Made by a program: the position numbers and the translations under genes
Source: Utricularia gibba
Lineage: Eukaryota > Plantae > Magnoliophyta
DNA length: 64,000 nucleotides
NCBI GenBank assembly: GCA_002189035.1
Contig: NEEC01000004.1
Location: 4,836,001-4,900,000, forward strand
Direction: 5' to 3'
Shown here: one piece after another, positions 8,674-41,274 of the stretch
Layout: every line of letters starts with the position of its first letter
Position numbering within the stretch: the first letter of the stretch is position 1
Notes under the pieces: generated by a model
What the model saw: the letters and a program-made list of their open reading frames with translations, nothing else
Told to the model about the DNA's origin: nothing
Databases searched by the model: none

Positions 8674-10289
8674 CGCCCACAACGCTTTTCTTCTGCTCCT
8701 GCGCTCAAGATCAAAAGCGACCAGAAGCTTGGCACCCAAGCATACAGGGACCTATACACACAGTAGGTTGGGACTCTGTGATTCCATGTACTTGGACCAA
8801 AATCTGATACGTTAAAGAGCAGAATCTGAACCTTCTTTTCTGAGGGGATTTTGGATGCTATAAATAATTTTGAACGGACACCGAGACCGAACTCTAACGG
8901 TTCGGATGCGCTGTTCTCATTGGACGCGTCCTTTAGTTAAATTTGGGTGTTTATAATTTAAATATCTGTGTTATTAAAAAATTTATTTAATAAACTTATT
9001 TGCTAGCATATATGGATGTATTTGATATAATGCTGTAATAATATTGTATTTAAATAAATACATATCATATAATGAAGGATTTGATCTAAATAAGAGTGTA
9101 AAGAATTTAGGTAAATACTACATGATGGGAGTAAAATACAGTTTATCTAATTTTATGTGAATCTTTCTTTTTAGAAAATGAGAATGTAATATTGTAGTTA
9201 GGTATCCAAAATAAATAATATCATATAAAAAAGATATGGATTGTTATATTTTTAAATATTAATTTTTAATATATATATATATATATATTTATTTAAAATA
9301 AATATAATTTTTCTTTATTTTATAATAATAATTGATTTGACGTTATTTAGTTTGACTTTAACATATAATAACTTGATGCATTTTATTTTGAAGTTTTTAT
9401 TAATATTTATAAAATAATTTAAATATAAATTAAATATTAAAAATGGAGACTATCAGATACACGCATAATTTTCATTTTAGGAATTGATGTACTCAAACCG
9501 GTGAACTCATAAATCAATAAATGCAAGCATCCGCACTCGTATATTCTAGTTTTGAAACTTCATTAATTTTATTTATACTTTAAAAATTATAACTATATAA
9601 ATATATTTTCAGTAAACATTTCTTATTTTATTTATAATTTATCAATCAAACATTCATCAAATTCATATATCCCTATTCCGTCAATATTTTTAATAAATTT
9701 TAATAATTTCTTTCTTGAAATAATTATTACAAGGATTTTTCCTTATTGTAATAAACACGAAAAAATTGGTATATTCTTGCAATTTATAATATTTTTATAA
9801 TATATCTTTATTAATAATATGAAAATTAATATAATATTAATAAAATTATGTCGAGTTCTCTGTGAATTCCCAATCCCAAGAGCCCCCAAATGAATAAACC
9901 TTCAACGATATCTCATCCTATTCTATTCGCCGTCAGTCGCCGATTCCGGTGAGATTGTGTCCGCCGCCGTCGCGTCTATGTTCCCCAGTTCGAGTTCATC
10001 TGGAGTGGGTATATTCCAATTATCTCAGCGACTCAGGATTCGAAGATCTGTCGAGACATCCACCCTCGGCCTCCAACTGAACCCTGTGTTGAGCTGGAAG
10101 CTACTTCACTTCACGTATGAACTGAGAGAAAGACGGCTTTTGTCATCTCCCGGCGTACAGCTGAAGAAGAAAAATGGCTTCCAGGTCATGCTTGGGTTCA
10201 GATGGAGTGTAGGGGTGGATGTTTGTAGGGATCTTTGAACCAGCGGCGTGGTACTTGGAATTTCCCTGCTCAACTTGGGGAACATAGAA

Positions 10290-10717
10290 GCAACAAACGG
10301 AATCGATGACTGCCAGTGAATAGAATATGATGAGGCATGGTTTCAGGTTTCTTCAATGTGAGGCTCTTCGGACTTCAATGGCGATTATCCAAATGGACGA
10401 GCACATATCTAGTTTTCTTGGAGCTTCACGGCCGAGTTGGAGGAGTCTGCTACAACCCTTGATCATTTTCAGGGGAAATGTTGGCCTTGGGGGTTTCAAA
10501 ACTCATAGCCATAGCCGATGTGATGCAGGCGGTCATCCCCTAAGAAGCTCCAAGAGGGAGAGGGTGAATTTAATTTCTGACAAAGTTCTCAAAATAATAT
10601 ATGAGATCGTCCACTTGGATAATTAACATTAAAGTTAGAAGAGCCTCGGAATGAAGGAACCTGAAACCGTGCCTCACCGTATTCTATTCACTGGCAGTCA
10701 TCGTTTCCGTTTGTTTC
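10290..10717. repeat. Hairpin H1: imperfect inverted repeat, arms ~10290-10408 and ~10597-10717 (~120 bp, ~80% identical), made of fragments of the island gene family
   Basis: Reverse complement of caaacggaatcgatgactgccagtgaatagaatatgatgaggcatggtttcaggtttcttc matches gaaggaacctgaaaccgtgcctcaccgtattctattcactggcagtcatcgtttccgtttg. The loop encodes a family N-terminal fragment (SWRSLLQPLIIFRGNVGLGGF). Confidence 0.85.
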
Positions 10718-12364
10718 AAGGTGAGTCATGGCGGACGTGTTTCGTTGCAAGTGAAAGCGAATTCAAATGGCTCTCCATCTCCACCTAGTGAAAATGGCGC
10801 CCTAGGAATCCCACATAAGAAAAGCTTTAAAAGAGATGACCCAAAGATCATGGGGATTGTGAGATGAATGAATGTGCAATTTAACTTCCAGGAAGCCCCT
10901 TTTACGCAGTTTTAAAAAAAGATCGAAATCCCCTTGCTAAAGAGCTTGGAGGCTCCTGTTAACAATACATTTTGGGTGTTAACAATAGAATTTTTTTTTA
11001 TAATAAAGTAATTAAAAATTGATACAAATTATTGGTAGATCGGACACATCTAACATGGGTCAAATTGAGGATTTATATATCTCCGATTCAGAGTAAATCA
11101 ATTATCATCAATGTTTACTATAAAATATAAAATATCAAAGCTGATAATTTATCATCATCGTAAGAGAGTTTCAATCAACAGAAAAAGAATAAAAAACTTA
11201 AGTAATAACAAACCGCTGAACCAATATTTTTATTAAAGGATCGTTGACCCAAGTCGTCGTGCATTCAGATAAAAAGAAAGAAAGGCCACACGACACGTCA
11301 CAAATCTTCTCTTCTTCTGGGAAGCAAGAAGGTGGATGCTGGTTTTGGGGCTTTCACGCTTCTGCAGACGACGCCGGTGAGGTTCGTGCTATTTTTCTGC
11401 GACGTTTTCATTCAACTCCGGGACAAGCAACGGCTGTGGGAGGAACCCTTGACGTCCTTTTCCTTCTTCTGAATATTGAGATTGTAGGAAGATTGTCCAC
11501 ACAGATTTACTTAGTGTTTAGTTGAGGTTAGTTGAGGTTATAATAAGGGATTAATTATTAGATATTAGATATTAATGTGTTTGATTTACGAATTTCTATA
11601 TCCCGAGATTTTACATGTATTTTATAAACCCTTGTTGGTGGAATTACATAAAGTAATCACACCATTTTACTTTATCTAATCTCATGATATGATTTTATCA
11701 AATTAACTTTATCTTACAATCATATTTATTTTTAGTAAAAAAATACTTCAATTTCAAAAAGATATTTTAGTAAATTATCTTTTTTTAATTTCATATATTT
11801 TAATAATATCAACTGAACACAATATAACATAATTCCATATTAACTAATCAAACACAATAAAAATGATATCTCACTCCATCCTAATTTATCAAATACTTAT
11901 TAATATAAAACCATCTCATTATATACCATCTCATCCTACTTTATCTGCAGCGCTTTTTCAACATCTTTTTTTTTTTTTTTGGTCTTATCAACTCTTTTTT
12001 CACAACATCAAATACATGTTTGTAAGTGAACCTTAAAGATTTCGAAATCTTATCAAATTTTCATATTTTTTTAACATAGCTTATGAAAGTAAAAATGATA
12101 TTGGTCATGTTTATGTTGACCTCTATGACATAAGACGAGATTTGGGTTGACTTATAGCAGCAATAATACATCAATACATGGTTATAAATTAACCGTTTTA
12201 CCTTGGGCCCTTCCACAAGATGGGGAGATGAAAACCCTTGATCAATGGCATAATGCAAAAGCCCTTTCGTTTATACTTGAGTAACAACAGCTCCTAGCTC
12301 ATCACTTGGTTCATTTGCAGGCAGAAAGCGGATTTCTGAACGGAGGATCTTCGAAGTAGAAGTG

Positions 12365-12674
12365 TGTTAGAGCCTTGGATTGAAACGGGTGACAGGACCC
12401 AGTTTGCACAGAAGAAGAAGAAGAAGGTTGCGAAGGAAGCGAGATTCAACACAAGTTGTCTAACAAAGAGAAAAAAACAGAAAAGTAGTCCATCAAAGAG
12501 AGCAGAAAACAAGTAACAAGGGAGAGTTCAGCCTCCAGGAAAAACACTCCGTCACACTCCGGCAGCCTCAAAGCTCGAGTCTACGTTCAGCTCTAACCTT
12601 CGATTGGCGGCAGGGAACGCACTCTTAAGCTCCAATAGACGATGGGCTCGATCCAGGGATAGAGGTCTGCATCA
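12365..12674. mobile_element. Solo LTR (310 bp) with 5-bp target-site duplication AAGTG
   Basis: Ends TGTTAGAGCC...GCATCA (TG...CA); AAGTG at 12360-12364 and 12675-12679; the paralogous site at ~16184-16198 is empty (gtag-AAGTG-tcgg). Confidence 0.88.
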
Positions 12675-13128
12675 AAGTGTCGGAACTTTGGATTTGCTCC
12701 GTTGATGAATCAGGATCATGATTCAAGCTCATTTGCGCTGAACTGGCCTTGGGTAGCATAAGAGTGACGACAGTGGGTATACATCCAAGAGAATCGATGA
12801 CTGACATGGTGTAGAATACGATCAGGCATGGTTTTAGATTCCTTGATTTGTAAACTATTGAGACTTCACGGGTGATCATCCAAGCGGAGAAGCAGAAATG
12901 AATCAGATCATATATTATTTTGACGACTGTGTTTGAAATACACACTTCAGCTATCTTCCAGGTGGAAATGAACTCAACCCCGAACAAGAAGAGGATAACA
13001 TAGGGTGCAACCCTAATTGCAATATACCAGAAGGCTGCCGGCTGCAGTTCATTACTGAAACCTCCGAGGGCAACATTTCCCAAGAAAACGATCAAGGCTT
13101 GTAGTAGCCTTCTCCAACTCATCTTCAT
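12625..13128 (-). CDS. Island family copy B: single-exon multi-TM protein, 167 aa, native C-terminus replaced by solo-LTR sequence
   Basis: Open ORF MKMSWRRLLQALIVFLGNVALGGFSNELQPAAFWYIAIRVAPY...KIIYDLIHFCFSAWMITREVS...SRNLKPCLIVFYTMSVIDSLG. The displaced native tail (SKILRSEIRFLPANEPSDELGAVVTQV*) lies beyond the LTR at ~12272-12360. Confidence 0.6.
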   Translation of the reverse strand: MKMSWRRLLQALIVFLGNVALGGFSNELQPAAFWYIAIRVAPYVILFLFGVEFISTWKIAEVCISNTVVKIIYDLIHFCFSAWMITREVSIVYKSRNLKPCLIVFYTMSVIDSLGCIPTVVTLMLPKASSAQMSLNHDPDSSTEQIQSSDTLMQTSIPGSSPSSIGA

Positions 13129-14937
13129 CTTATTGGTTGTTGTAGCAGCAAGTGGCGTCTAAGAAGAGGGAAGAAGTAGCAAGTCGGAGTCTGGGATGGG
13201 ATATGGACAGGGAGAAATGGCGCCGTTGGCTAAATAAGAAGGGAAGAAGTACAAGACAAAACAGCGAACGAAAAGGTTTTTCCATGACACTTTCATTAAT
13301 TTATGCCATATTTTGGTTCATCGACGTGAAGTGGCCTTAGCGCAGTTTGTCAAGATGGGTCCCGTGCTTGAAAGCTTTTTGATCACTTTGGTGATAGCTT
13401 TTTGATGGTTTCATTCTCATTGATCAGTTTTATAGACATAAGACGGTTGCCCGTTGTACAGTAGAATTTGACCGTTACTCTTACTTTGTAGAGTAGTACA
13501 GGCTCTTATCCAGTTGTATGTTGCAATCTCAATTGGGCCGAACTTGTCTTCATGGATTGATCTCTAGAGGTTGCATCGTAGCCCATGAAGCCTGAGTGTT
13601 TGGGCCCGAGAATGATCAAGGCCTTTTTGCTATCTGAGGGAGGGTTGTTTCTTCTGGAATGCGCTAGGGCATTGCGGCGACCTTCTTCGCTGTTCATACC
13701 TTTCTGGGTCTTCAGTGCTTCATCATCGTTCGCTAACAGTGCTATATGTCAACCTGCAAGGGTTTAGTAAAATACATACCAATTTCACTAATTTTTTCAG
13801 GGTTTAGTACCGTAGGTGGTTATCTATCCACACAACCACAAACCAAATAAAGTAAATCCTGTCAGACACAAAATTCCTGATTCACTCAGAATCACTCGTC
13901 GGGAGCATCCTTATAAATTAGGGCCCAGCTTAAGAGAAAGCCACTCTGCAGTCTACACCCTTTACACTCTTGGTAACCCTCTTTTTCTCTCTTAAAATGA
14001 TAAAAAGGTGAAAATGATCTTTTAAGTATACATATATATTTACATGTATAATAAGTTAGTTACTAATTTTTTTTGAAATACTAAATTGTTGGGGTACTAT
14101 TTTTGTCGACTTTTCAAATAATGAGGATCATTGATACAATAATGTTTATTCAAATAGTTAGTACTGTTTTTTTTGGAGACTAAAAATATCAAGTTTACAA
14201 ACATTGAGGACTAATTTCATCCGATTTTTAAATAATCAGGATCAATTTTTCGTGGTTTTTAATCGGACTTTAGAAATGCGCAAATCTTTATTAGAAGCTG
14301 ATCCATATGCACCAACCTATTAGAATACATAATCATATATCGAGAAATGAAAATAAAATAAGCAAGTATATAAAAAATTACAGAATATAAATAATAAATT
14401 ATATATAATCTTTTTTATTATGATTTAATGTATTTGAGTTTCATGTATATCCTCGTCCAACTGATCTAATCCTAAATTTCAACACAAACTTTCCTTCCTC
14501 CTAGTAAACGACCAAAACTACCAAATCATGAATCAATATTATTCATTCAATCAGTGGGAAACCTCTCTTATTTCAACGTGTTCACGCTTTTTGATTGAAT
14601 GGGAAATATTTTTTGTATTATAGAATCGTTGACCCGAGTCGTCGTGCATTCAGATAAAGAGAAAGAAAGGCCACACACCACGCGTCACAAATCTTCTCTT
14701 CTTCTGGGAAGCAAGAAGGTGGATGCTGGTTTCGGGGCTTTCACGCTTCCGCAGACGACGCCGGTGAGCTTCTTGCTATTTTTCTGCAACGTTTTCATTC
14801 AACTCTGGGATAAGCAACGGCTGTGGGAGGAACCCTTGCCCTTCTTCTCCTTCTTCTTCTGAATATTGAGATTGTAGGAAGCTTGTCCAGATCTCCTTCA
14901 ATAATACATTTAAGTCAACCTTCAGACAGATTTGGGG

Positions 14938-15628
14938 AGTAAATTAGCTGTATACCTCTACTTTTTGCAAATGGTTTGCAAAATACCTGATGTTTTGCAA
15001 ACCATTTGTAAAATACCTGATGTTATGTTGAACATGGTTTGACTTGCAAATGAATATTTCATTTGCATATGAATATTAATATTTTAATGAAATTTCGTAT
15101 ATTAATATTATATATATATATAAGATAAACAAATATTTATTTTGATGATTATTATAATACAATTGTTTACGTTTTACTCAATTGTAAAAAAACAAATAAT
15201 TATTTTCTTTCACTTGTAATATTATAATTTTTGAGATACATATATTTTGCAAACAAAAATAGTTTTATAAATTAATATTTTTAATAAAATTTGAAAATAT
15301 TTTCAATTAATTGATGAAAATTGAACAGTGATCTACTTAAAAATAAATAAGACTTTTAGATTACTAACAATTTACAAATTAATTTATCTTTTAATACTCT
15401 ATTATATTCCAAATCACTCATTAATATCTTATGTAATATTAAATTAAAGATTACATATATTTTCATATAGTATAATTATATAAAAAATCATTGTACATTT
15501 TAAATTTAGAAACTACATGTATTTTGCAAATAGTTTGCAAAATATCATGTATTTTGCAAACTATTTGCAAAAGATCAGGTATTTTACAAATGAGTTTCTC
15601 TAAGTACATGGATAAACCCACAGGACCC
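14938..15628. mobile_element. Putative non-autonomous fold-back/MULE-like element
   Basis: Flanked by an 11-bp direct repeat CAGATTTGGGG (14927-14937, 15629-15639); inverted subterminal arrays of TTTGCAAAATACCTGAT-like units at ~14960-15025 and ~15515-15590; AT-rich core; absent from duplication copy 1. The extreme termini do not form a clean TIR. Confidence 0.55.
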
Positions 15629-16092
15629 CAGATTTGGGGTATTCTGCAACGCTTTTTCAACATCTTTTTTTTTTTTTGTCTTATCAACTCTTTTTTCACA
15701 ACATCAAGTACATGTTTGTAAGTGAACCTTAAAGATTTCGAAATCTGATCATATTTTCATGTGCGTAAAAGGATCCATTATCTAGTAATATATATATATA
15801 TATTAACTTAGCTTGCAAAGTTACAAGTGACACTCTCAGGGACATTTATTTTTAGACAATACAATGTTGTAATATTAGTATTTATTCGCCCTGTTTGTCC
15901 ACAAAATCATACCTCATCATATTGGTCATATTTATGTTGACCTCTATGACATGAGACAGAGATTTGGGTCGACTTACAGCAGTACCTAATACATCATTAC
16001 ATGCTTATAAGTTAACCGTTTTAACTTGGCCCCTTCCACAAGATGGCGAGATGAAACCCTTGATCAACAGCAGAATGCAAAAGCCCTTTCGT

Positions 16093-16686
16093 TTATACTT
16101 GAGTAACAACAACAGCTTCTAGCTCATCAGTTGGTTCATTTGCAGGCTGAGACTGGATTCCTGAACGGAGGATCTTCGAAGTAGAAGTGTCGGAACTTGG
16201 GATTTGCCCCGTTGATGAATCAGGATCATGATTCAAGATCCTTTGCGCTGAACTGGCCTTGGGGAGCATAGAAGTGGCTATACATCCAAGAGAATCGATG
16301 ACTGACAATGAATAAAATACGATCAGGCATGGTTTTAGATTCCTTGATTCGTAAACACTTGAGACTTCACCGTTGATCATCCAAACGGAAAAGCACAAAT
16401 GAATGGATTCATATATTATTTTGACAACTGCGTTTGGAACCCACACTTCAGCTCTCTTCCAGGTAGAAGCGTACCGCGATTTCTTGCATCGGAAACGCCG
16501 ATTATGACGGCGAGTGAGAAACCCAAACCGGAACGAGAAGGGCGTAAGCGTGCACGCATAGGGTGCAACCCTAAGTGCAATATACCAGAAGCCTGCCGGA
16601 TGCAGTTCATTAGAGAAACCTCCGAGGGGAACAGTTCCCCAGAAAACGATTAAGGCTTGTAGTAGCCTTCTCCAGCTCATCTTCAT
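16093..16686 (-). CDS. Island family copy C: intact single-exon multi-TM protein, 197 aa from MKMSW
   Basis: Uninterrupted ORF, start inferred by homology to copy B. Hydrophobic segments (LLQALIVFWGTVPLGG, FWYIALRVAPYAC, IHLCFSVWMI, CLIVFYSLSVIDSLGCIA) and an Arg-rich loop. Confidence 0.65.
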   Translation of the reverse strand: MKMSWRRLLQALIVFWGTVPLGGFSNELHPAGFWYIALRVAPYACTLTPFSFRFGFLTRRHNRRFRCKKSRYASTWKRAEVWVPNAVVKIIYESIHLCFSVWMINGEVSSVYESRNLKPCLIVFYSLSVIDSLGCIATSMLPKASSAQRILNHDPDSSTGQIPSSDTSTSKILRSGIQSQPANEPTDELEAVVVTQV

Positions 16687-18559
16687 CTTATTGGTTGATG
16701 ATGAGTCAATTAAGGAGAATTTCATCAGAGCCCGCACGGAGAGGAGAGTTGCAGTAGGTGGAAGTGTAAAACAGGAAAGAGGAAGCTGAGCGTGGGATGC
16801 GGGATGAAATGAGAGTTGCAGAAGTGGAAGTGTAATTAAGAAGAGGGAAGAAGTAGGAAGTGGGGTGGGGCAATCCTTTTCTAGTTCATTTGCATTTACC
16901 GCATCCACCCCATCCCACCGTTTAATTGTCCACGTGGACTGCTGCTAATTTGCTCACAATCGGGAGGGGCGGGTACAGATGCGTCATTGAATACATCATG
17001 TAGAAAATTATTTTCTAATGTAGAAAATATGTAAAAATATAATGATAACTCTAATTTTGTTAATTTGTCCTCACTTAGGATACAAGAATATCATATTATA
17101 AAAACTGCAAACCTTATGTTCGATACACATGCCTTTTAACCTCCCATCGTTTTATGTCTTCATAATATACCCCAATGTAAATGTGTATTATATATATAAT
17201 ATGTGCATCTGTGTTAACCATGTTATTTGATGGGGACTAATTATGTATATGACACGTGGAGATGAAATCCTCTAGAAAATGGTCTTAAGACATGAATTAC
17301 ACGAGCATCAAAACAGTCGATTGTTATTGTCAGCAACACCATACATATGAACACAAAACATAGAAAACAACTAACATTTTCAGTATTCCGTTGAGTCAAC
17401 CTCCCTTATAAATATAATAATACTTGAAGGAAAAGGTATTAGATTCTCGACACACTATTTGTAATCAACTTTTCTCCTTTGTTAGTGAAACTGATTTCTT
17501 CGATAAACTTTCCCAATTCTGTGACTTTTTCCGTTTATCGATAGTTTTCATGTAAAAATCCCTATATACATGCAATTCTTTTGTCCCCACTAATGCAGGA
17601 GAAAGGCTGATTGATCGAAGAGAAGATTTATTTTACACAGGTCCTTTTACTTACAGTATTTAGCCCAATAAATGGGGCACGAATTAATTGATGTATATAA
17701 ACACTGAAGACTAGTTTGAATAGAGAGAGAGGAAAATTGGGTTCACAGAAACCCGCAAAACCCTTCGCGTTCTTGGCATCTCTTTCTTCGAAGAACACAA
17801 TCTCTCCTGGGGAAGTCACAATACCCACATCAGCACAAATACCCGTAAAACCTTATATCGGATACGGTAAAACCGGCTTGACAACCCCAAAATCGGCCAT
17901 CATCAATAAAGCCGATTTTTTACCACAATACTATTATTTTACACAATATATACTATAATAATTTGCATCACATGAATGTGAATATCAGGTATTATATTTC
18001 ATAGTAAGGTTAATGCAACACAAGTTTCAATTATCTATGAATCATATTCTGTGTGGGATGTGGAAAAAGCTTGCTGAGAGATGCTTCATTTGGCATGGAT
18101 CATCGTGCATTAGGAGCTTGATAATAACACCTTGATCCGGCTTCTTGTGAATTACACCTGTGAGAGACTTCAGCTGGTTCACTCAGTCCTTCGCCCTCCT
18201 CAGCTAACACTGCAAATTACATGGGCCAGTTGGGAACTCTCCAGGGCATCATTCGCCAACTGCGGCGACTGGGTGCGGCGGCAAAAGATGAGTATTTATA
18301 TTGAGAATTTATTTTGCTAAAAACCAAAATATAAAGATATTTGAAGTATTGAAATAATAAGATTAATTGTATGTAAATTTTAAATAGTAAAAACTAATGG
18401 TGCTGATTATTCAAACATTGGGAATCAAATATGATAAGAGGGTGTTTGATAATATATTATAAAAGATTTATATTCAAGTTTAAATATAAATCGTTGTTTG
18501 ATTAATTAGTATATGATGAATCATGATTTCAGATTTGTTGTGTGGGAGGCTTTGTAGAG

Positions 18560-19025
18560 ACTTCAATGTTAAAAAAATTCCTTCTTGTAATTTATCATAA
18601 TTATTAAAAATTTGTTGTAACATGATCTCGTGTCATTGAAAAAAAAATCATATTACAATTCTTATTACAAGAATATCATTTCAAGAATTGTTATTTTTAA
18701 TAAATAATATTATTAAATGTTAATAATTTCCTTTTTGAAATATTATTACAGGAATGTTATTATGATAATAACAATGTCTCATATTACAATTTTTCATTAT
18801 TATAAGAATTTCCTTCTTCTAATAAAATAAAAATTATGAGAGTTGGTATTCTTCTTGTAATTTATCATGTTGAAAAACAAATTCTCATAATATCATCATA
18901 TTGCAAAGAATATCATTTCAGGAATCATCATTTTGTATAAATATTCCTTCTAGAAATATTCTCATAAGAATTTCCTTCTTGTAATTTATCATAATTTTGT
19001 AATAAATACTTAGTAATAATATTAT
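18560..19025. repeat. AT-rich array of degenerate short repeats immediately left of the hairpin cluster
   Basis: CTTCTTGTAATTTATCAT recurs at ~18581, ~18850 and ~18975; AAGAATATCATTTCA at ~18669 and ~18906; AAGAATTTCCTTCTT twice. Confidence 0.7.
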
Positions 19026-19129
19026 ATTGTGTTCTCAATATTTATATACGAGTTGTGTTCGTCCATTTGAACAATCACCCGTGATATTACAATACCCTTC
19101 CGAATCAAGAAACTACAAGTACTGCCTCA

Positions 19130-20670
19130 TGATGTTCTATTTGCTCTCAACAGCAAATTCTGTATGGTTTCTCGTCCACACTATACTGATATGGAGGGCA
19201 CAAAATGGGGATACCCAGGATCCAAGATCATCAGCTGGGCGTGTTCCAACCATCTCAGTCGCTGATGATGCTGCAAGTTCGATGATTCGTCCAGACATCC
19301 ACCTTTGGTAAACAACAACAGCTGTTAGCTCATCATTTGGTTCATTTGCAGGCTGAGACTTGATTCCTGGGATTTGCCCCATTGATGAATCAGGATCATG
19401 ATTCAAGCTCATTTTGCGGAACAAAAGAGTGATGGCAGTGCCAAGAGAATCGATGACTGAGATTGAATAAAATACTATGAGGCATGGTTTTAGATTCCTT
19501 GATTTGGTAACCCTTGAGACTTCATCGTTAATCATCCAAACCGATGAGCAGAAATGAATCAAGTCATATATTATTTTGAGAAGTGTGGTTGAAATCCGCA
19601 TTTCAGAAATGAGCAGAAATGACTTGCCCCGTTCTGACGGCGATTCCGACGGCGATGAACGGCGATTCCGACGGCGAGACTGGATTCATGGGATTTGCCC
19701 CGTTGATGAATCAGAATTCCTGGGAAACCCAAATAGGAACGAGAGCGCAACCATACAAGAATATGGCGCAACTCTAAGTGCAATATACCATAAGGCTGTC
19801 GGATGGAGTTCAGTGCAGAAACCGCCGAGGACAAGAGTCCCCCAGAAGACGGTTAAGGCTTGTATCATCATCTTCTGTATGGTTCCTCATGGACACTATA
19901 CTGATATTTTATTTGCTCTCAGAAGATGATGATACAAGCCTTAACCGTCTTCTGGGGGACTCTTGTCCTCGGCGGTTTCTGCACTGAACTCCATCCGACA
20001 GCCTTATGGTATACTGCACTTAGAGTTGCGCCATATTCTTGTATGGTTGCGCTCTCGTTCCTGTTTGAGTTTCCCAGGAATCCTGATTCATCAACGGGGC
20101 AAATCCCATGAATCCAGTCTCGTCGTCGGAATCGCCGTTCATCGCCGTCGGAATCGCCGTCGGAACGGGGCAAGTCATTTCTGCTCATTTCTGACATGCG
20201 GATTTCAATCACAGTTCTCAAAAGAATATATGACTTGATTCATTTCTGGTCATCGGTTTGGATGATTAACGATGAAGTCTCAAGGGTTACCAAATCAAGG
20301 AATCTAAAACCATGCCTCATCGTATTTTATTCAATCTCAGTCATCGATTCTCTTGGCACTGCCATCACTCTTTTGTTCCGCAAAATGAGCTTGAATCATG
20401 ATCCTGATTCATCAATGGGGCAAATCCCAGGAATCCAGTCTCAGCCTGCAAAAATGAACCAAATGATGAGCTAACAGCTGTTGTTGTTTACCAAAGGTGG
20501 ATGTCTGGACGAATCATCGAACTTGCAACATCATCAGCGACTGAGATGGTTGGAACACGCCCAGCTGATGATCTTGGATCCTAGGTATCCCCATTTTGTG
20601 CCCTCCATATCAGTATAGTGTCCATGAGGAACCATACAGAATTTGCTGCTGAGAGCAAATAAAATATCAT
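19130..20670. repeat. Hairpin H2: long near-perfect inverted repeat, arms ~19178-19877 and ~19920-20621, 42-nt loop, with more diverged outer extensions
   Basis: The ORF track gives near-identical translations on opposite strands (19571-19834- vs 19963-20238+; 19686-19871- vs 19926-20111+; 19137-19601- vs 20196-20474+). About a dozen substitutions plus one 2-bp indel counted by eye. Confidence 0.97.
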
Positions 20671-20762
20671 AAGGGAGTTGCGTTGATTTTCTGACTCCGA
20701 AGGTGCTAGGAGTTCACGGCTGATCATCCAGAAGGAGAAAGAAGCACAAATGGATCCCACAA

Positions 20763-21194
20763 GCTTCTGCAAGCCTTGCTCGTATTCTGGGGCAATGTTG
20801 CCCTGGTGGGGTTCAGCAGTCAAATGGATCCCCCAAGCTTCTGGTACGTCGCGGTGAACCTGGCACCGTATGAGTGGATGAACCCCAATATTCTCCAACG
20901 ACAATCAAGGTTTGCGTTACGCAGGTGCCGCCGCCAAAACTGCCGTCGTTTCCGACTGCCGGACTTCACGGGTGATCATCCAAAGGGAGAAACACAAATG
21001 GGGGACATACCTCACTGCCCATCCCTTTGATGATATCCTCCCATTGGAATTGAAGCCCCGCAGTCGGAAACACCGGCGGTTTTGACGGCGGCGCCTGCGG
21101 AACCCAAACCTTGATTTTTGATGGGGAATATTTGGGTTCATCCACTCCTACGGTGCCAGGCTCACCGCAGAATACGAGCAAGGCTTGCAGCAGC
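20763..21194. repeat. Hairpin H3: imperfect inverted repeat of family 5' halves, core arms 20851-20968 / 21051-21168, plus a 26-bp outer stem
   Basis: gcggtgaacctggcaccgtatgagtggatgaaccccaatattc pairs with gaatatttgggttcatccactcctacggtgccaggctcaccgc; outer gcttctgcaagccttgctcgtattctg pairs with cagaatacgagcaaggcttgcagcagc. Confidence 0.88.
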
Positions 21195-21291
21195 CTCCTA
21201 CAAAAACGCCGGCAGTTCCAATCGGAGGATATGGATTGCTATTTTCCAACAACGAATGGGGTTTGGATTCCGCAGTCGCCGCCGCCAAGAC

Positions 21292-21970
21292 GACGGCGTT
21301 TCCGATTGTACGGTTTCAAGTCCAACCGGAGAATATCTGACGGATGGAAAGTTCTCAATATATAATAAATGAGATCATCCATTTGTGCTTCTTCATTTGG
21401 ATTATCTCCCACGAAATTTCAAGACCTTCGGAATCAAGGAATCAAAAAACTTGTCTCGTTATATTTTATTCACTGATAGCCGCAGATTCTGTATGGGCCG
21501 TCGTCGCTTCTATCTTCCATAACACCAATTCATGGAGAGTGCAAAACCGATGATCTCAGTTCATCAAGTGAGCAGATTCCAACCATCTTCGTCACTGATG
21601 ATGCTTCAAGTTTGATGATCCGTCCAAATATCCCTAAAAATATGAATATCTGGGCGGATCACCGAACTTGCAGCTTCATCAGTGACTAAGATGCTTGGAA
21701 TCTGCCCAGATGATGAACTTGGATCAGGGTTAACTCCATTTTGTGCTCTGCGTGAATTGATGCTGTGGAGTATAGAGTGGACGAAGGGCCATAGAGAATT
21801 TGCTGCTGCAATATTTTTGGTTTTTTTGATTCGGAAGGTCTTGGAACTTCGCGGGTGATCATTCAACGGGAGAAACACAAATGGATGATCTCATATATTA
21901 TATGAAGAAGTTTCCATCCCTTAGATATCTTCCGATTGGAATTAAAACCGCCCGATCGGAAAATGCCGTC
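21292..21970. repeat. Hairpin H4: imperfect inverted repeat, ~330-340 bp arms (~75-80% identical), ~12-nt loop at ~21633-21644
   Basis: aatgagatcatccatttgtgcttctt pairs with gagaaacacaaatggatgatctcata; gatccgtccaaatatc pairs with gaatatctgggcggatc; outer gacggcgtttccgat pairs with atcggaaaatgccgtc. Confidence 0.9.
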
Positions 21971-39278: not shown

Positions 39279-41274
39279 ATGGGTGGCTTGGAATTTCGAA
39301 ACTTACAGCTTGTGATTGCGGGCGTTATTCTATTTTTTCCGATCCTGGGAGCGCCGGACTTGGATTCCGATATGGCGGCGTTGTTGTCCCTCCGATCGGC
39401 CTTGGGTGGGCGTCTCCGTGAGTGGAATAGTGAGAACTCAAATCCTTGTGAGTGGGCTGGCGTCATATGTTCGCCGGAAAGAAACTCTGTTGTTGGGCTT
39501 CACCTCCCCGGAAGGGGCCTCCGGGGCCCGTTGCCGGAAAATATCATCTCTAATATGACGAATCTGCGTACTCTTAGCTTGCGTTACAACTCCCTCTCTG
39601 GTCCGATTCCAGCGAACTTTTTTTCATCGCTCACTCGTCTACGGAATCTTTATCTGCAGTTTAACCTTTTCAGTGGCGAGATTCCGGATTCTTTGTTCAC
39701 TTTAACGTCACTCGTTCGCTTGAATTTGGGCAATAACAATTTCTCCGGTGCGGTTTCGCCTTCGTTCAACAATTTGAGTCGCTTGGGGACGCTGTACTTG
39801 CAGAACAACAGTTTTTCAGGGGAATTACCAAATCTCAGTTTCCGGTTGGCTCAATTCGATGTTTCCAACAATAACCTCACCGGCCGGATTCCACAGGGGC
39901 TATCTACTCAACCAAGAACCTCATTTATCGGAAATTCGCTCTGCGGCCAACCCTGGATCCCTGTGTGAATCGGAATCCAAGAAATAAGCTATCCAGCGGC
40001 GCCATTGCCGGAATCGTGATAGGGTCCATCCTCGTCCTTGTTCTGATTGTATTGCTAATATTATGTTTGATTGGGTTATTGATCGGAAAAGACAAGAAAT
40101 CTTCTCAAAACAAGGAACCTGAAATTGGGATTCTGGGAGACGACGCCGTCGAGAGAAACGCAATAACTCTCGGCGGCGGCGTCGGTATTACCACTCTAGC
40201 AGCTGCCGGTGTGAGGGAGAACGAGAAAATTGAAGGCACCGTCAACGGCGGTGGCGGCCCCGGAGGGAAGAAAATTTTAGTCTATCTCGGATCCACTGAT
40301 TGGAATTTTGACTTGGAAGAACTTCTGAGAGCGTCTGCGGAAGTTCTGGGGAAAGGAACATTTGGAACTACTTACAAAGCTGTTCTCGAAACAAATGTGT
40401 CTGTTGCAGTGAAGCGCCTGAGAGAAGTTAAACTTGGGGACAAGGAATTCAGAGCAAAAATAGAAGTCATCGGAAAAGTAGATCACGAAAATTTGGTTCC
40501 TCTGAAAGCTTATTTCTTCGGCAACGCTGAAAAGCTCCTGGTTTTCGATTATCTGCCTCTGGGAAGCCTCTCTGCAGTGTTACATGGTAAGAATCGGAAT
40601 CATTCCAAGAATTCTTGAAACCCAGTTGCCTAAATGTTCTATTGATGGCAGGAAGCAAGGGCGGCCGCCGCACGCCGTTAACCTGGGAAACTAGGGTTTC
40701 GATCGCCGCCGGCGCTGCCAGAGGCATCGCCCATCTCCATTCACAAAGCCCATCATTTTCCCATGGTAACATCAAATCATCCAACATTCTACTGACAAAA
40801 TCATACGAAGCCCGTGTCTCTGATTACGGGCTCGTCCAAATCGCCACCCCAACGGCGCCACCGGCTCCTGCCCGAGTCGTGGGGTACCGGGCGCCGGAAG
40901 TCACCGATTCCCAGAAAATTTCACAGAAAGCCGACGTGTACAGTTTCGGGGTATTACTACTCGAACTGCTAACAGGAAAGGCACCCATGAATTCATTGTT
41001 GAACGAAGAAGGCGTGGATCTACCGAGATGGGTGCAATCAGTGGTTCGGGAAGAGTGGGCCGACGAAGTGTTCGACGTGGAACTTCTCCGCTATCAGAAC
41101 GTAGAAGATGACATGCTGCAGTTGCTACAGCTCGGCATTGACTGTACATCTCAGCTCCCAGACAGCCGGCCAACGATGGCTCAAATCGTAACCAGAATCG
41201 AGAGTCTCGCCCGCCGGGGCACCCACGGCTTGGACGCCGACATCGAAGAGCCCGGCGGCGCATCTGCAAATTAG
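39279..41274 (+). CDS. LRR-III atypical receptor kinase (RKL1/RLK902-like); intron 40587-40651; -1 frameshift at ~39950
   Basis: LRRNT and LRRs, TM (LSSGAIAGIVIGS), kinase FDLEELLRASAEVLGKGTFGTTYKA...HGNIKSSNILL...GYRAPE...WVQSVVREEW; adding one C in caaccctgg gives GQPLDPC. Confidence 0.93.

What the first reader, a model, noticed from the sequence alone, without database searches (positions are those of the whole stretch)
9990..21970. Candidate self-contained silencing system: a lineage-specific membrane-protein family beside a cluster of hairpins made from its own sequence
Seen: the 12 kb island between GEX1 and nicastrin is built largely from one family. It has two ORFs (copy B 12625-13128, copy C 16093-16686) and fragments in alternating orientation across 19.05-21.97 kb (+,-,+,-,+,-,+,-) and at 10.0-10.7 kb, forming four fold-backs (H1-H4). 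H2 shares perfect tracts with the ORFs: TTGATGAATCAGGATCATGATTCAAGCTCATTT (33 nt, H2 19382 = copy B ~12702), AGGCATGGTTTTAGATTCCTTGATT (25 nt, in H2, B and C) and CCAAGAGAATCGATGACTGA (20 nt, all three). Established: inverted duplication of gene fragments is a recognised origin of plant hairpin siRNA loci and young MIRNA genes, and hairpin RNAs act in genetic conflict (Drosophila Nmy/Tmy suppress the Dox distorters; the maize/teosinte Tpd1 hairpin is itself part of a pollen-drive system). Inference: this is a polycistronic hairpin locus that silences the adjacent ORFs and/or unlinked paralogues, with hairpins of graded age (H2 young; H1, H3 and H4 older).
Basis: partly seen in the sequence, partly recalled or inferred. 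Interest (0 to 1): 0.9.

Follow-up and report, generated by a model that had tools for sequence, protein, structure and literature searches.

The report
Gene-derived hairpin cluster beside orphan genes
A 12 kb stretch of a compact plant genome holds copies of one orphan small gene, four of them folded into mirror-image repeats, and the youngest looks like a natural RNAi construct against its two intact neighbours, but nothing I could reach shows that it is transcribed or makes small RNAs.

Summary
Between about 10.0 and 22.0 kb, one sequence family occurs as two open reading frames (B and C, inside a 3.4-3.8 kb tandem duplication) and as ten fragments of alternating orientation that form four fold-backs.

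- **H2:** 533-nt inner arms (97.6% complementary, 42-nt spacer) sit inside 252-nt outer arms (about 92-94%).
- **The family:** it has no detectable relative in billions of proteins. In-frame indels and ORF length point to a coding origin.
- **Targeting:** H2 shares 40-46 perfect 21-mers with B and C. H1, H3 and H4 share 0-2.
- **Old hairpins:** their mismatches show no strand-specific G:U excess, so they look like neutral decay.
- **Origin:** H2's spacer is built from two exact snippets of the right outer arm joined at 3-6 nt microhomologies. That is a template-switch or filler-DNA signature, so the birth was mutational.
- **Expression:** no RNA evidence was obtainable. No listed RNA run holds H2.

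Best reading: a young endogenous inverted-repeat (endoIR) siRNA candidate of a known kind, plus decaying relics. It does not look like a designed polycistronic system. Earlier notes of this scan flag similar palindromic gene arrays at other loci of this genome, which suggests a genome-wide tendency.

The parts
10158..10412 (-). H1 left arm: diverged family fragment (b-c segments)
   Evidence: tblastn with C gives E = 1e-11. It forms an inverted repeat, 10292-10416 / 10591-10715, 84% complementary. The fold has z = -18.6.
10435..10711 (+). H1 loop and right arm: family fragment (a then b segments)
   Evidence: tblastn with B gives E = 4e-11; inverted repeat listed.
11223..13142 (-). Tandem-duplication unit carrying ORF B (12625-13128, 167 aa). 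A 315-nt indel (about 12366-12680), flanked by a 6-nt direct repeat, supplies B's stop codon.
   Evidence: blastn shows about 90% identity to 14605-16700. The nucleotide alignment shows in-frame indels. The ORF is listed.
14605..16700 (-). Second tandem unit carrying ORF C (16093-16686, 197 aa, frame open to 16908). It contains a MITE-like insertion at 14951-15614.
19096..19347 (+). H2 left outer arm: a diverged 'type 2' b'c' fragment, tail-to-tail with the inner copy
   Evidence: Inverted repeat I2, 93.6% over 250 aligned nt, tblastn. A 100%-identical short-read contig from run X4 spans 17714-19347.
19345..19877 (-). H2 left inner arm: a near-full-length family copy (a-b-c) with one in-frame stop
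   Evidence: It carries the B/C (ancestral) base at 5 of 10 informative arm-variant sites, so it is a lineage of its own. No short-read contig was laid on it.
19878..19919 (.). H2 spacer, made wholly of two exact snippets of the right outer arm. 19873-19907 is the reverse complement of 20607-20641. 19902-19922 is the reverse complement of 20649-20669. They are joined at 5-, 6- and 3-nt microhomologies.
   Evidence: Exact-match search.
19920..20452 (+). H2 right inner arm: a near-full-length family copy with the same stop, plus a 2-nt indel at the inner/outer arm junction (about 20452)
   Evidence: Run X1 contigs cover 20008-20904 and a run X4 contig covers 20138-20435, all at 100%.
20452..20703 (-). 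H2 right outer arm (type 2 b'c'; the ORF runs on to 20904)
20761..21199 (.). H3: a + linker (+) facing b-start + linker + a (-). Arms 20851-20968 / 21051-21168, 86% complementary.
21341..21910 (.). H4: type 2 b-c (+) tail-to-tail with c-b (-), about 10-nt centre near 21635, 80.7% complementary

Best explanation
The island is a young, local cluster of a lineage-restricted small-ORF family. The family has been duplicated repeatedly, once in tandem (B and C) and at least four times in inverted orientation.

The inverted duplications are products of DNA repair or replication template switching. H2's spacer is a patchwork of exact snippets copied from 700 nt away and joined at microhomologies.

The youngest product, H2, is an endogenous inverted repeat with a stem of about 0.8 kb, made from an already stop-bearing family copy. 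If Pol II reads through it from a flank, the RNA should fold into long double-stranded RNA. DCL2/DCL4-type Dicers should then cut it into 21-22 nt endoIR-siRNAs without needing an RDR. Those siRNAs could act in trans on B and C through the conserved tracts.

H1, H3 and H4 are older products of the same process. They are now decaying neutrally and are no longer able to target the ORFs.

Shown: the structures, the homology, targeting competence, neutral decay and the origin signature. Inferred: transcription, dicing and silencing.
For: - **Structures and folds:**
- **Family map and alternating orientation:**
- **Tandem unit:**
- **Coding origin:** indels inside the ORF are 9, 48, 9, 315 and 3 nt, all multiples of 3, against 17, 15 and 1 nt outside it. 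None of 2000 shuffles of B gives an open frame of that length. dN/dS is 0.37-0.57 in older comparisons.
- **Orphan status:** no Pfam or NCBIfam family. No hit in the word-indexed searches. Only three spurious repeat-protein hits in an exhaustive phmmer of 1.84 billion representatives.
- **Targeting competence:** H2 has 40 (B) and 46 (C) perfect 21-mers, and 282 and 406 with 3 mismatches or fewer. The tracts are more clustered than chance.
- **Templated spacer:**
- **Nested ages:** inner arms 13/533 mismatches against outer arms 16/250, Fisher p = 0.008.
- **Both arms genuine:**; P is about 6e-4 if the left arm were the right arm plus random errors.
- **Background:** transcribed endoIRs are diced by DCL2/3/4 independently of RDRs and are suspected MIR progenitors (PMC10827316).
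Against: - No RNA evidence. No listed RNA run holds H2, and RNA run X11 has no contig on C or on any hairpin.
- H2's arms are head-to-head with only 42 nt between them, so it has no promoter of its own and needs read-through from outside.
- B and C have evolved at the same rate as their non-coding flanks, with dN/dS 0.89. They may themselves be dying genes with nothing left to regulate.
- G:U versus A.C mismatches are symmetric in all four hairpins, so there is no sign of selection on RNA pairing.
- The left inner arm and the spacer are not covered by short-read contigs.
- If the organism is Utricularia gibba, as I infer, its 24-nt siRNA pathway is weakened (PMC8333044).
Confidence: 0.45

Rival explanations
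1. Inert structural debris. The palindromes are by-products of error-prone break repair or template switching in a decaying orphan-gene cluster. They are not transcribed, or are transcribed without consequence, and will be deleted.
For: - The spacer is built from templated snippets at microhomologies.
- Mismatch spectra are neutral and strand-symmetric.
- B and C evolve like their flanks, with dN/dS 0.89.
- No RNA contigs lie on the locus.
- Unchecked notes of this scan describe similar palindromic gene arrays at other loci of the same genome. One was followed up with the same outcome.
Against: - In plants, long near-perfect inverted repeats are usually diced once any read-through occurs (PMC10827316).
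- The genome is gene-dense, so read-through is plausible.
- The perfect tracts shared with B and C are longer than random placement of mismatches predicts.
- Four fold-backs from one family in a genome that otherwise sheds DNA is a lot for pure chance.
Confidence: 0.4
2. Genetic-conflict module. The orphan family is selfish or harmful (for example a gametic killer), and the hairpins are successive generations of suppressors, as with Drosophila Dox/Nmy-Tmy or teosinte Tpd1.
For: - The family is orphan and fast-evolving with in-frame indels.
- Hairpins of graded age were formed repeatedly from the same family.
- The locus lies next to a gamete-expressed gene, which is only suggestive.
Against: - There are no expression, phenotype or population data.
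- The old hairpins show no maintenance of pairing and no residual targeting capacity.
- No paralogues are known outside the island.
Confidence: 0.07
3. H2 is an assembly artefact, a chimeric fold-back of long reads.
For: Neither of the two short-read runs has a laid contig on the left inner arm or the spacer, and arm depth is not clearly doubled.
Against: - The arms differ by 13 substitutions and no indels, and the left arm carries the ancestral B/C base at 5 of 10 informative sites.
- Both outer arms, which are about 6% diverged from each other, are each confirmed by 100%-identical short-read contigs. One contig ends exactly at the T-run where the two junctions differ, as expected at a graph branch.
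- The spacer has a structured, templated make-up.
Confidence: 0.04
4. The family is a transposable or foldback element, and nested insertions explain the palindromes.
For: There are many inverted copies. A MITE-like inverted repeat sits in the C unit (14951-15614).
Against: - None of the spacer ORFs I scanned has a transposase or reverse-transcriptase domain.
- The family is confined to the island.
- I saw no terminal repeats bounding the units.
- Depth in the two low-coverage DNA runs (X1, X4) is close to that of the flanks.
- No relative was found in metagenome contigs.
Confidence: 0.03

Closest known systems
Endogenous inverted-repeat (endoIR) siRNA loci of plants, such as Arabidopsis IR71 (PMC10827316)
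   Same: A long, near-perfect intramolecular stem of hundreds of bp, which would yield double-stranded RNA without an RDR. It is non-coding, since both arms carry a stop.
   Different: No transcript or small RNA is shown here. The arms derive from a neighbouring gene family rather than from transposons or anonymous sequence.
Natural inverted gene duplications that silence paralogues: Arabidopsis PAI1-PAI4, the soybean I (CHS) locus, rice Lgc1, maize Mu killer (my own knowledge; Mu killer is also named in PMC10827316)
   Same: An inverted duplication of one family member lies near intact paralogues with which it shares long identical tracts.
   Different: In those cases silencing, siRNAs or methylation and a driving promoter are demonstrated. 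Here none is. H2 is only about 78% identical to its putative targets outside the conserved tracts.
Proto-MIRNA genes formed by inverted duplication of target genes (Allen et al. 2004 model; PMC3237417 updates it)
   Same: The hairpin arms show extended similarity to the putative target, and there is a series of progressively degenerate fold-backs.
   Different: No discrete miRNA/miRNA* duplex is known. The degenerate hairpins H1, H3 and H4 keep no conserved 21-nt window against B or C. The Rfam hits are sub-threshold, generic hairpin matches.
hpRNA suppressors of selfish gene families: Drosophila Nmy/Tmy versus Dox, teosinte Tpd1 (my own knowledge)
   Same: A young, lineage-restricted gene family lies together with hairpins derived from it.
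   Different: There is no evidence of drive, germline expression or small RNAs. This is an analogy only.

Membership tests
endoIR / hairpin-siRNA locus | One strand can fold into a long, nearly perfect stem | tested here: met
   -1411 kcal/mol for 1499 nt; 97.6% pairing in the inner arms and 93.6% in the outer arms.
endoIR / hairpin-siRNA locus | A single transcript spans both arms | tested here: inconclusive
   No listed RNA run holds H2, and RNA run X11 has no contig on it. Only assembled contigs of a few runs could be examined.
endoIR / hairpin-siRNA locus | 21-24 nt small RNAs from the arms, biased to the precursor strand, DCL-dependent and RDR-independent | not testable with these tools
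   No small-RNA reads could be laid. The ShortStack table of PMC8333044 is held only in part and is indexed by unitig coordinates that I cannot link to the window.
Paralogue-silencing inverted gene duplication (PAI1-PAI4 / CHS I-locus type) | An inverted duplicate of a family member with long identical tracts to intact paralogues | tested here: met
   33-, 27-, 26-, 25- and 20-nt perfect tracts. 40-46 perfect 21-mers against B and C.
Paralogue-silencing inverted gene duplication (PAI1-PAI4 / CHS I-locus type) | Reduced RNA or methylation of the paralogues that depends on the repeat | not testable with these tools
   This needs RNA-seq, bisulfite data and a deletion or natural variant.
MIRNA gene (young) | Precise excision of one dominant miRNA/miRNA* duplex from an imperfect hairpin | not testable with these tools
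   Only sub-threshold, generic Rfam hairpin matches at the H2 and H4 centres. Nothing reaches a gathering score.
MIRNA gene (young) | A retained window complementary to the target within an otherwise diverged hairpin | tested here: not met
   H1, H3 and H4 have 0-2 perfect 21-mers against B or C and 0-12 with 2 mismatches or fewer.
Transposable / foldback element | Dispersed multicopy units with terminal repeats and target-site duplications, or TE protein domains | tested here: not met
   The family occurs only in the island within 64 kb. No TE domains in the scanned spacer ORFs. Depth in runs X1 and X4 is about that of the flanks. The whole genome was not searchable.
   No Pfam hit at E up to 1. 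No homologue in the exhaustive search or the profile search.

The most novel reading that the evidence does not exclude
The island is a self-contained conflict module. A fast-evolving orphan membrane-protein family, possibly harmful or selfish, is kept in check by successive generations of hairpin suppressors born from its own copies. It is retained in a genome that otherwise deletes non-essential DNA and has a weakened 24-nt pathway. A related and more modest reading is that this genome has a general, microhomology-driven tendency to turn small gene families into palindromic arrays, which acts as a nursery for hairpin RNAs.
Probability: 0.08. Interest if true: 0.8.

Novelty: new member of a known kind. 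Interest (0 to 1): 0.4.

Why it matters
If H2 is transcribed, it would be a clean natural example of how an RNAi trigger against a gene family is born. The DNA-level birth mechanism (templated, microhomology-joined centre) is still readable, and older and younger stages lie side by side. In a minimal plant genome with an atypical small-RNA profile, that would bear on how new hairpin RNAs and MIRNA genes arise, and on whether such loci are selected or merely tolerated. If it is silent, it is still a documented case of serial palindrome formation by template switching in a genome known for DNA loss.

Tried and rejected
- **Family assignment failed.** Pfam, NCBIfam, the word-indexed search with B, the profile search with 13 fragments, exhaustive phmmer (the three hits are repetitive proteins and spurious), atlas features (best 0.88, unnamed clusters), exact-sequence look-up and JGI metagenome loci all gave no relative. 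The AlphaFold2 model has pLDDT 41, so I ran no fold search.
no support.
- **Transposon idea:** rejected for lack of TE domains, defined ends or extra copies.
- **Known RNA families:** only generic, sub-threshold miRNA-hairpin matches. No tRNA.
- **Selection on RNA pairing:** the G:U versus A.C asymmetry test was negative.
- **Expression:** two run searches and one read-laying run gave DNA contigs only.
- **Published small-RNA table:** the ShortStack table of PMC8333044 could not be used. It is truncated in the library and indexed by unitig coordinates. Tiling H2 with search terms would have exceeded the look-up cap.
- **Organism:** the PPR neighbour's best hits are Lamiales at 62% identity or less. 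An exact look-up found no record. Utricularia gibba is an inference from that result, the gene density and the dates and labels of the DNA runs.
- **Nicastrin flank:** not verified.


Full report

Yes. A repeat scan of 9.5-22.5 kb finds a 533-nt inverted repeat, 19345-19877 / 19920-20452, reported as 98% complementary with 42 nt between the arms. It is flanked by a second pair, 19096-19347 / 20452-20703. The scan also finds weaker pairs at 10292-10416 / 10591-10715, 20851-20968 / 21051-21168 and 21360-21449 / 21814-21903.

Realigned, the arms are 97.6% complementary (H2 inner, 13 substitutions and no indel), 93.6% (H2 outer), 84% (H1), 86% (H3 core) and 80.7% (H4). As RNA, a 1499-nt stretch covering most of H2 (19150-20648) folds into one continuous stem of -1411 kcal/mol. 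H1, H3 and H4 fold with z-scores of -18.6, -21.2 and -25.2 against dinucleotide shuffles.

tblastn with the family's own translations maps fragments in strictly alternating orientation across 19.03-21.91 kb (+,-,+,-,+,-,+,-) and a -,+ pair at 10.16-10.71 kb. They are 33 nt and 27 nt with B (25 nt with C) and 20 nt with both. They are longer than random placement of the mismatches gives (P = 0.019 for the longest, 0.0012 for the top three).

In the whole 64 kb window, every inverted repeat of 60 nt or more within 3 kb lies in this island. The family occurs nowhere else in the window.

**2. What the island is made of**

B (12625-13128, minus strand, 167 aa) and C (16093-16686, minus strand, 197 aa) sit in a tandem duplication, 11223-13142 versus 14605-16700, of about 90% identity.

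Aligned at the nucleotide level, the ORF part is as diverged as the non-coding part (about 10%), and dN/dS between B and C is 0.89. That speaks for recent neutral evolution. Three things still point to a coding origin:
- All indels inside the ORF are multiples of three (9, 48, 9, 315 and 3 nt), while those outside are 17, 15 and 1 nt.
- None of 2000 shuffles of B keeps an open frame of that length.
- Older comparisons give dN/dS of 0.37-0.57.

The family therefore probably encodes, or recently encoded, a small protein. B has four hydrophobic stretches, but base composition by codon position is flat and the AlphaFold2 model is useless, with pLDDT 41. 'Membrane protein' is plausible but not established.

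**3. No relatives**

Pfam and NCBIfam give nothing. The word-indexed search of 5.8 billion proteins gives nothing with B or with a 13-fragment profile. An exhaustive phmmer of 1.84 billion representatives returns only three repetitive, unrelated proteins. JGI metagenome contigs hold no relative.

The neighbouring PPR gene's best hits are Lamiales proteins at 62% identity or less. The window is very gene-dense. The DNA runs that hold the locus date from 2013, plus a 'plant metagenome' of 2016. I infer that the organism is Utricularia gibba, but this is an inference. That species' own proteome seems absent from the collections. 'Lineage-specific' therefore means absent from other Lamiales. It does not mean that the family lacks paralogues elsewhere in this genome.

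**4. Anatomy of H2 and how it arose**

Each inner arm is a nearly complete family copy with N-terminal, middle and C-terminal segments. Both arms carry the same in-frame stop, so the copy was already broken when it was mirrored. The copy is about 22% diverged from B and C. It is therefore an older paralogue and not a copy of either.

The outer arms are a different, more diverged subtype of the family, lying tail-to-tail with the inner copies. H4 has the same tail-to-tail layout. Inner and outer arms differ significantly in divergence (13/533 against 16/250, p = 0.008). The palindrome is therefore nested, or its centre is being homogenised.

The 42-nt spacer is fully explained by two exact snippets of the right outer arm, about 700 nt away. 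19873-19907 is the reverse complement of 20607-20641. 19902-19922 is the reverse complement of 20649-20669. The snippets overlap each other by 6 nt and overlap the arms by 5 and 3 nt. Templated patches joined at microhomologies are the signature of replication template switching or filler-DNA synthesis during break repair (my own knowledge). This is direct sequence evidence that H2 was born by a mutational accident of DNA repair.

**5. Is H2 an assembly artefact?**

Contigs of two independent short-read runs match the window at 100% over 16.1-19.35 kb, 20.0-20.9 kb and 21.2-22.0 kb. That includes both outer arms and all 13 right-arm variants. None lies on the left inner arm or the spacer, so the centre is not independently confirmed.

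Several points argue against an artefact:
- The arms differ only by substitutions.
- At 5 of 10 informative variant sites the left arm has the base shared with B and C while the right arm is derived. That is very unlikely if the left arm were a miscopied right arm (P about 6e-4).
- One contig ends exactly at the T-run where the two inner/outer junctions differ, as expected at a graph branch.

I put the artefact reading at about 4%.

**6. Function**

H2 is competent to silence B and C. It has 40 and 46 perfect 21-mers, and 282 and 406 with three mismatches or fewer, against B and C respectively. In plants, transcribed endogenous inverted repeats are diced by DCL2/3/4 without an RDR and are regarded as possible MIRNA progenitors (PMC10827316).

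Nothing shows that H2 is transcribed. No listed RNA run holds it. The one RNA run laid on 16-22 kb covers only 17591-17823, a fragment of a gene that lies elsewhere. H2's arms are head-to-head with 42 nt between them, so it has no promoter of its own.

The older hairpins share 0-2 perfect 21-mers with B and C. In all four hairpins, G:U-type and A.C-type mismatches are equally frequent (7:4, 7:9 for the whole of H2, 4:4 and 15:10). There is therefore no sign that pairing on either strand has been under selection. Rfam finds only generic, sub-threshold hairpin matches.

If the species is U. gibba, 21-nt RNAs dominate its small-RNA pool and DCL3 is truncated (PMC8333044). A hairpin would then be expected to act mainly post-transcriptionally.

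**7. Verdict**

The structure is real and striking. The best reading is a young endoIR-type siRNA candidate, born by template switching from an orphan gene cluster, lying next to three decayed predecessors. The 'polycistronic silencing system' remains untested, and for the older hairpins it is unlikely. An inert-debris reading is almost as probable.

Earlier, mostly unchecked notes of this scan list similar palindromic gene-fragment arrays at other loci of this genome. One was followed up with the same outcome: structure real, no small-RNA evidence. This points to a genome-wide mutational tendency rather than a special device at this locus.

It is a new member of a known kind, of moderate interest.

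Noticed in passing
window 17591-17823: A 233-nt segment with sharp boundaries. DNA contigs (X1, X6) and RNA contigs (X11) match it but run on into unrelated sequence on both sides, and its depth is raised in run X6. It looks like a fragment of an expressed, multi-copy gene or element inserted in the spacer. No Pfam or Rfam match.
   Followed up: partly
window 14951-15614: A MITE-like element: terminal inverted repeats of about 77 nt (14951-15027 / 15538-15614) with internal sub-repeats. It is present in the C tandem unit and absent from the B unit.
   Followed up: no
window 12366-12680: A 315-nt indel relative to C, flanked by a 6-nt direct repeat, provides B's stop codon. A contig of the divergent run X6 that was laid on C at 16185 runs on into this B-type segment. 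C may therefore have lost it recently, or a third copy exists.
   Followed up: partly
window 19355-19396, 19676-19717, 20080-20121, 20401-20442: A 42-nt piece of the family's C-terminal motif is duplicated into the linker of the H2 copy. Each arm therefore carries it twice, four copies in H2 in all. The in-frame stop lies at this insertion.
   Followed up: partly
window 39279-41274: Three consecutive ORFs in three different frames, the first with LRR and LRRNT_2 domains. This is probably an LRR receptor-like gene with frameshifts or introns.
   Followed up: no
window 18570-19020: An AT-rich block with several copies of a roughly 47-68 nt repeat, directly upstream of H2. Read-through transcription into H2 could start here.
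   Followed up: no
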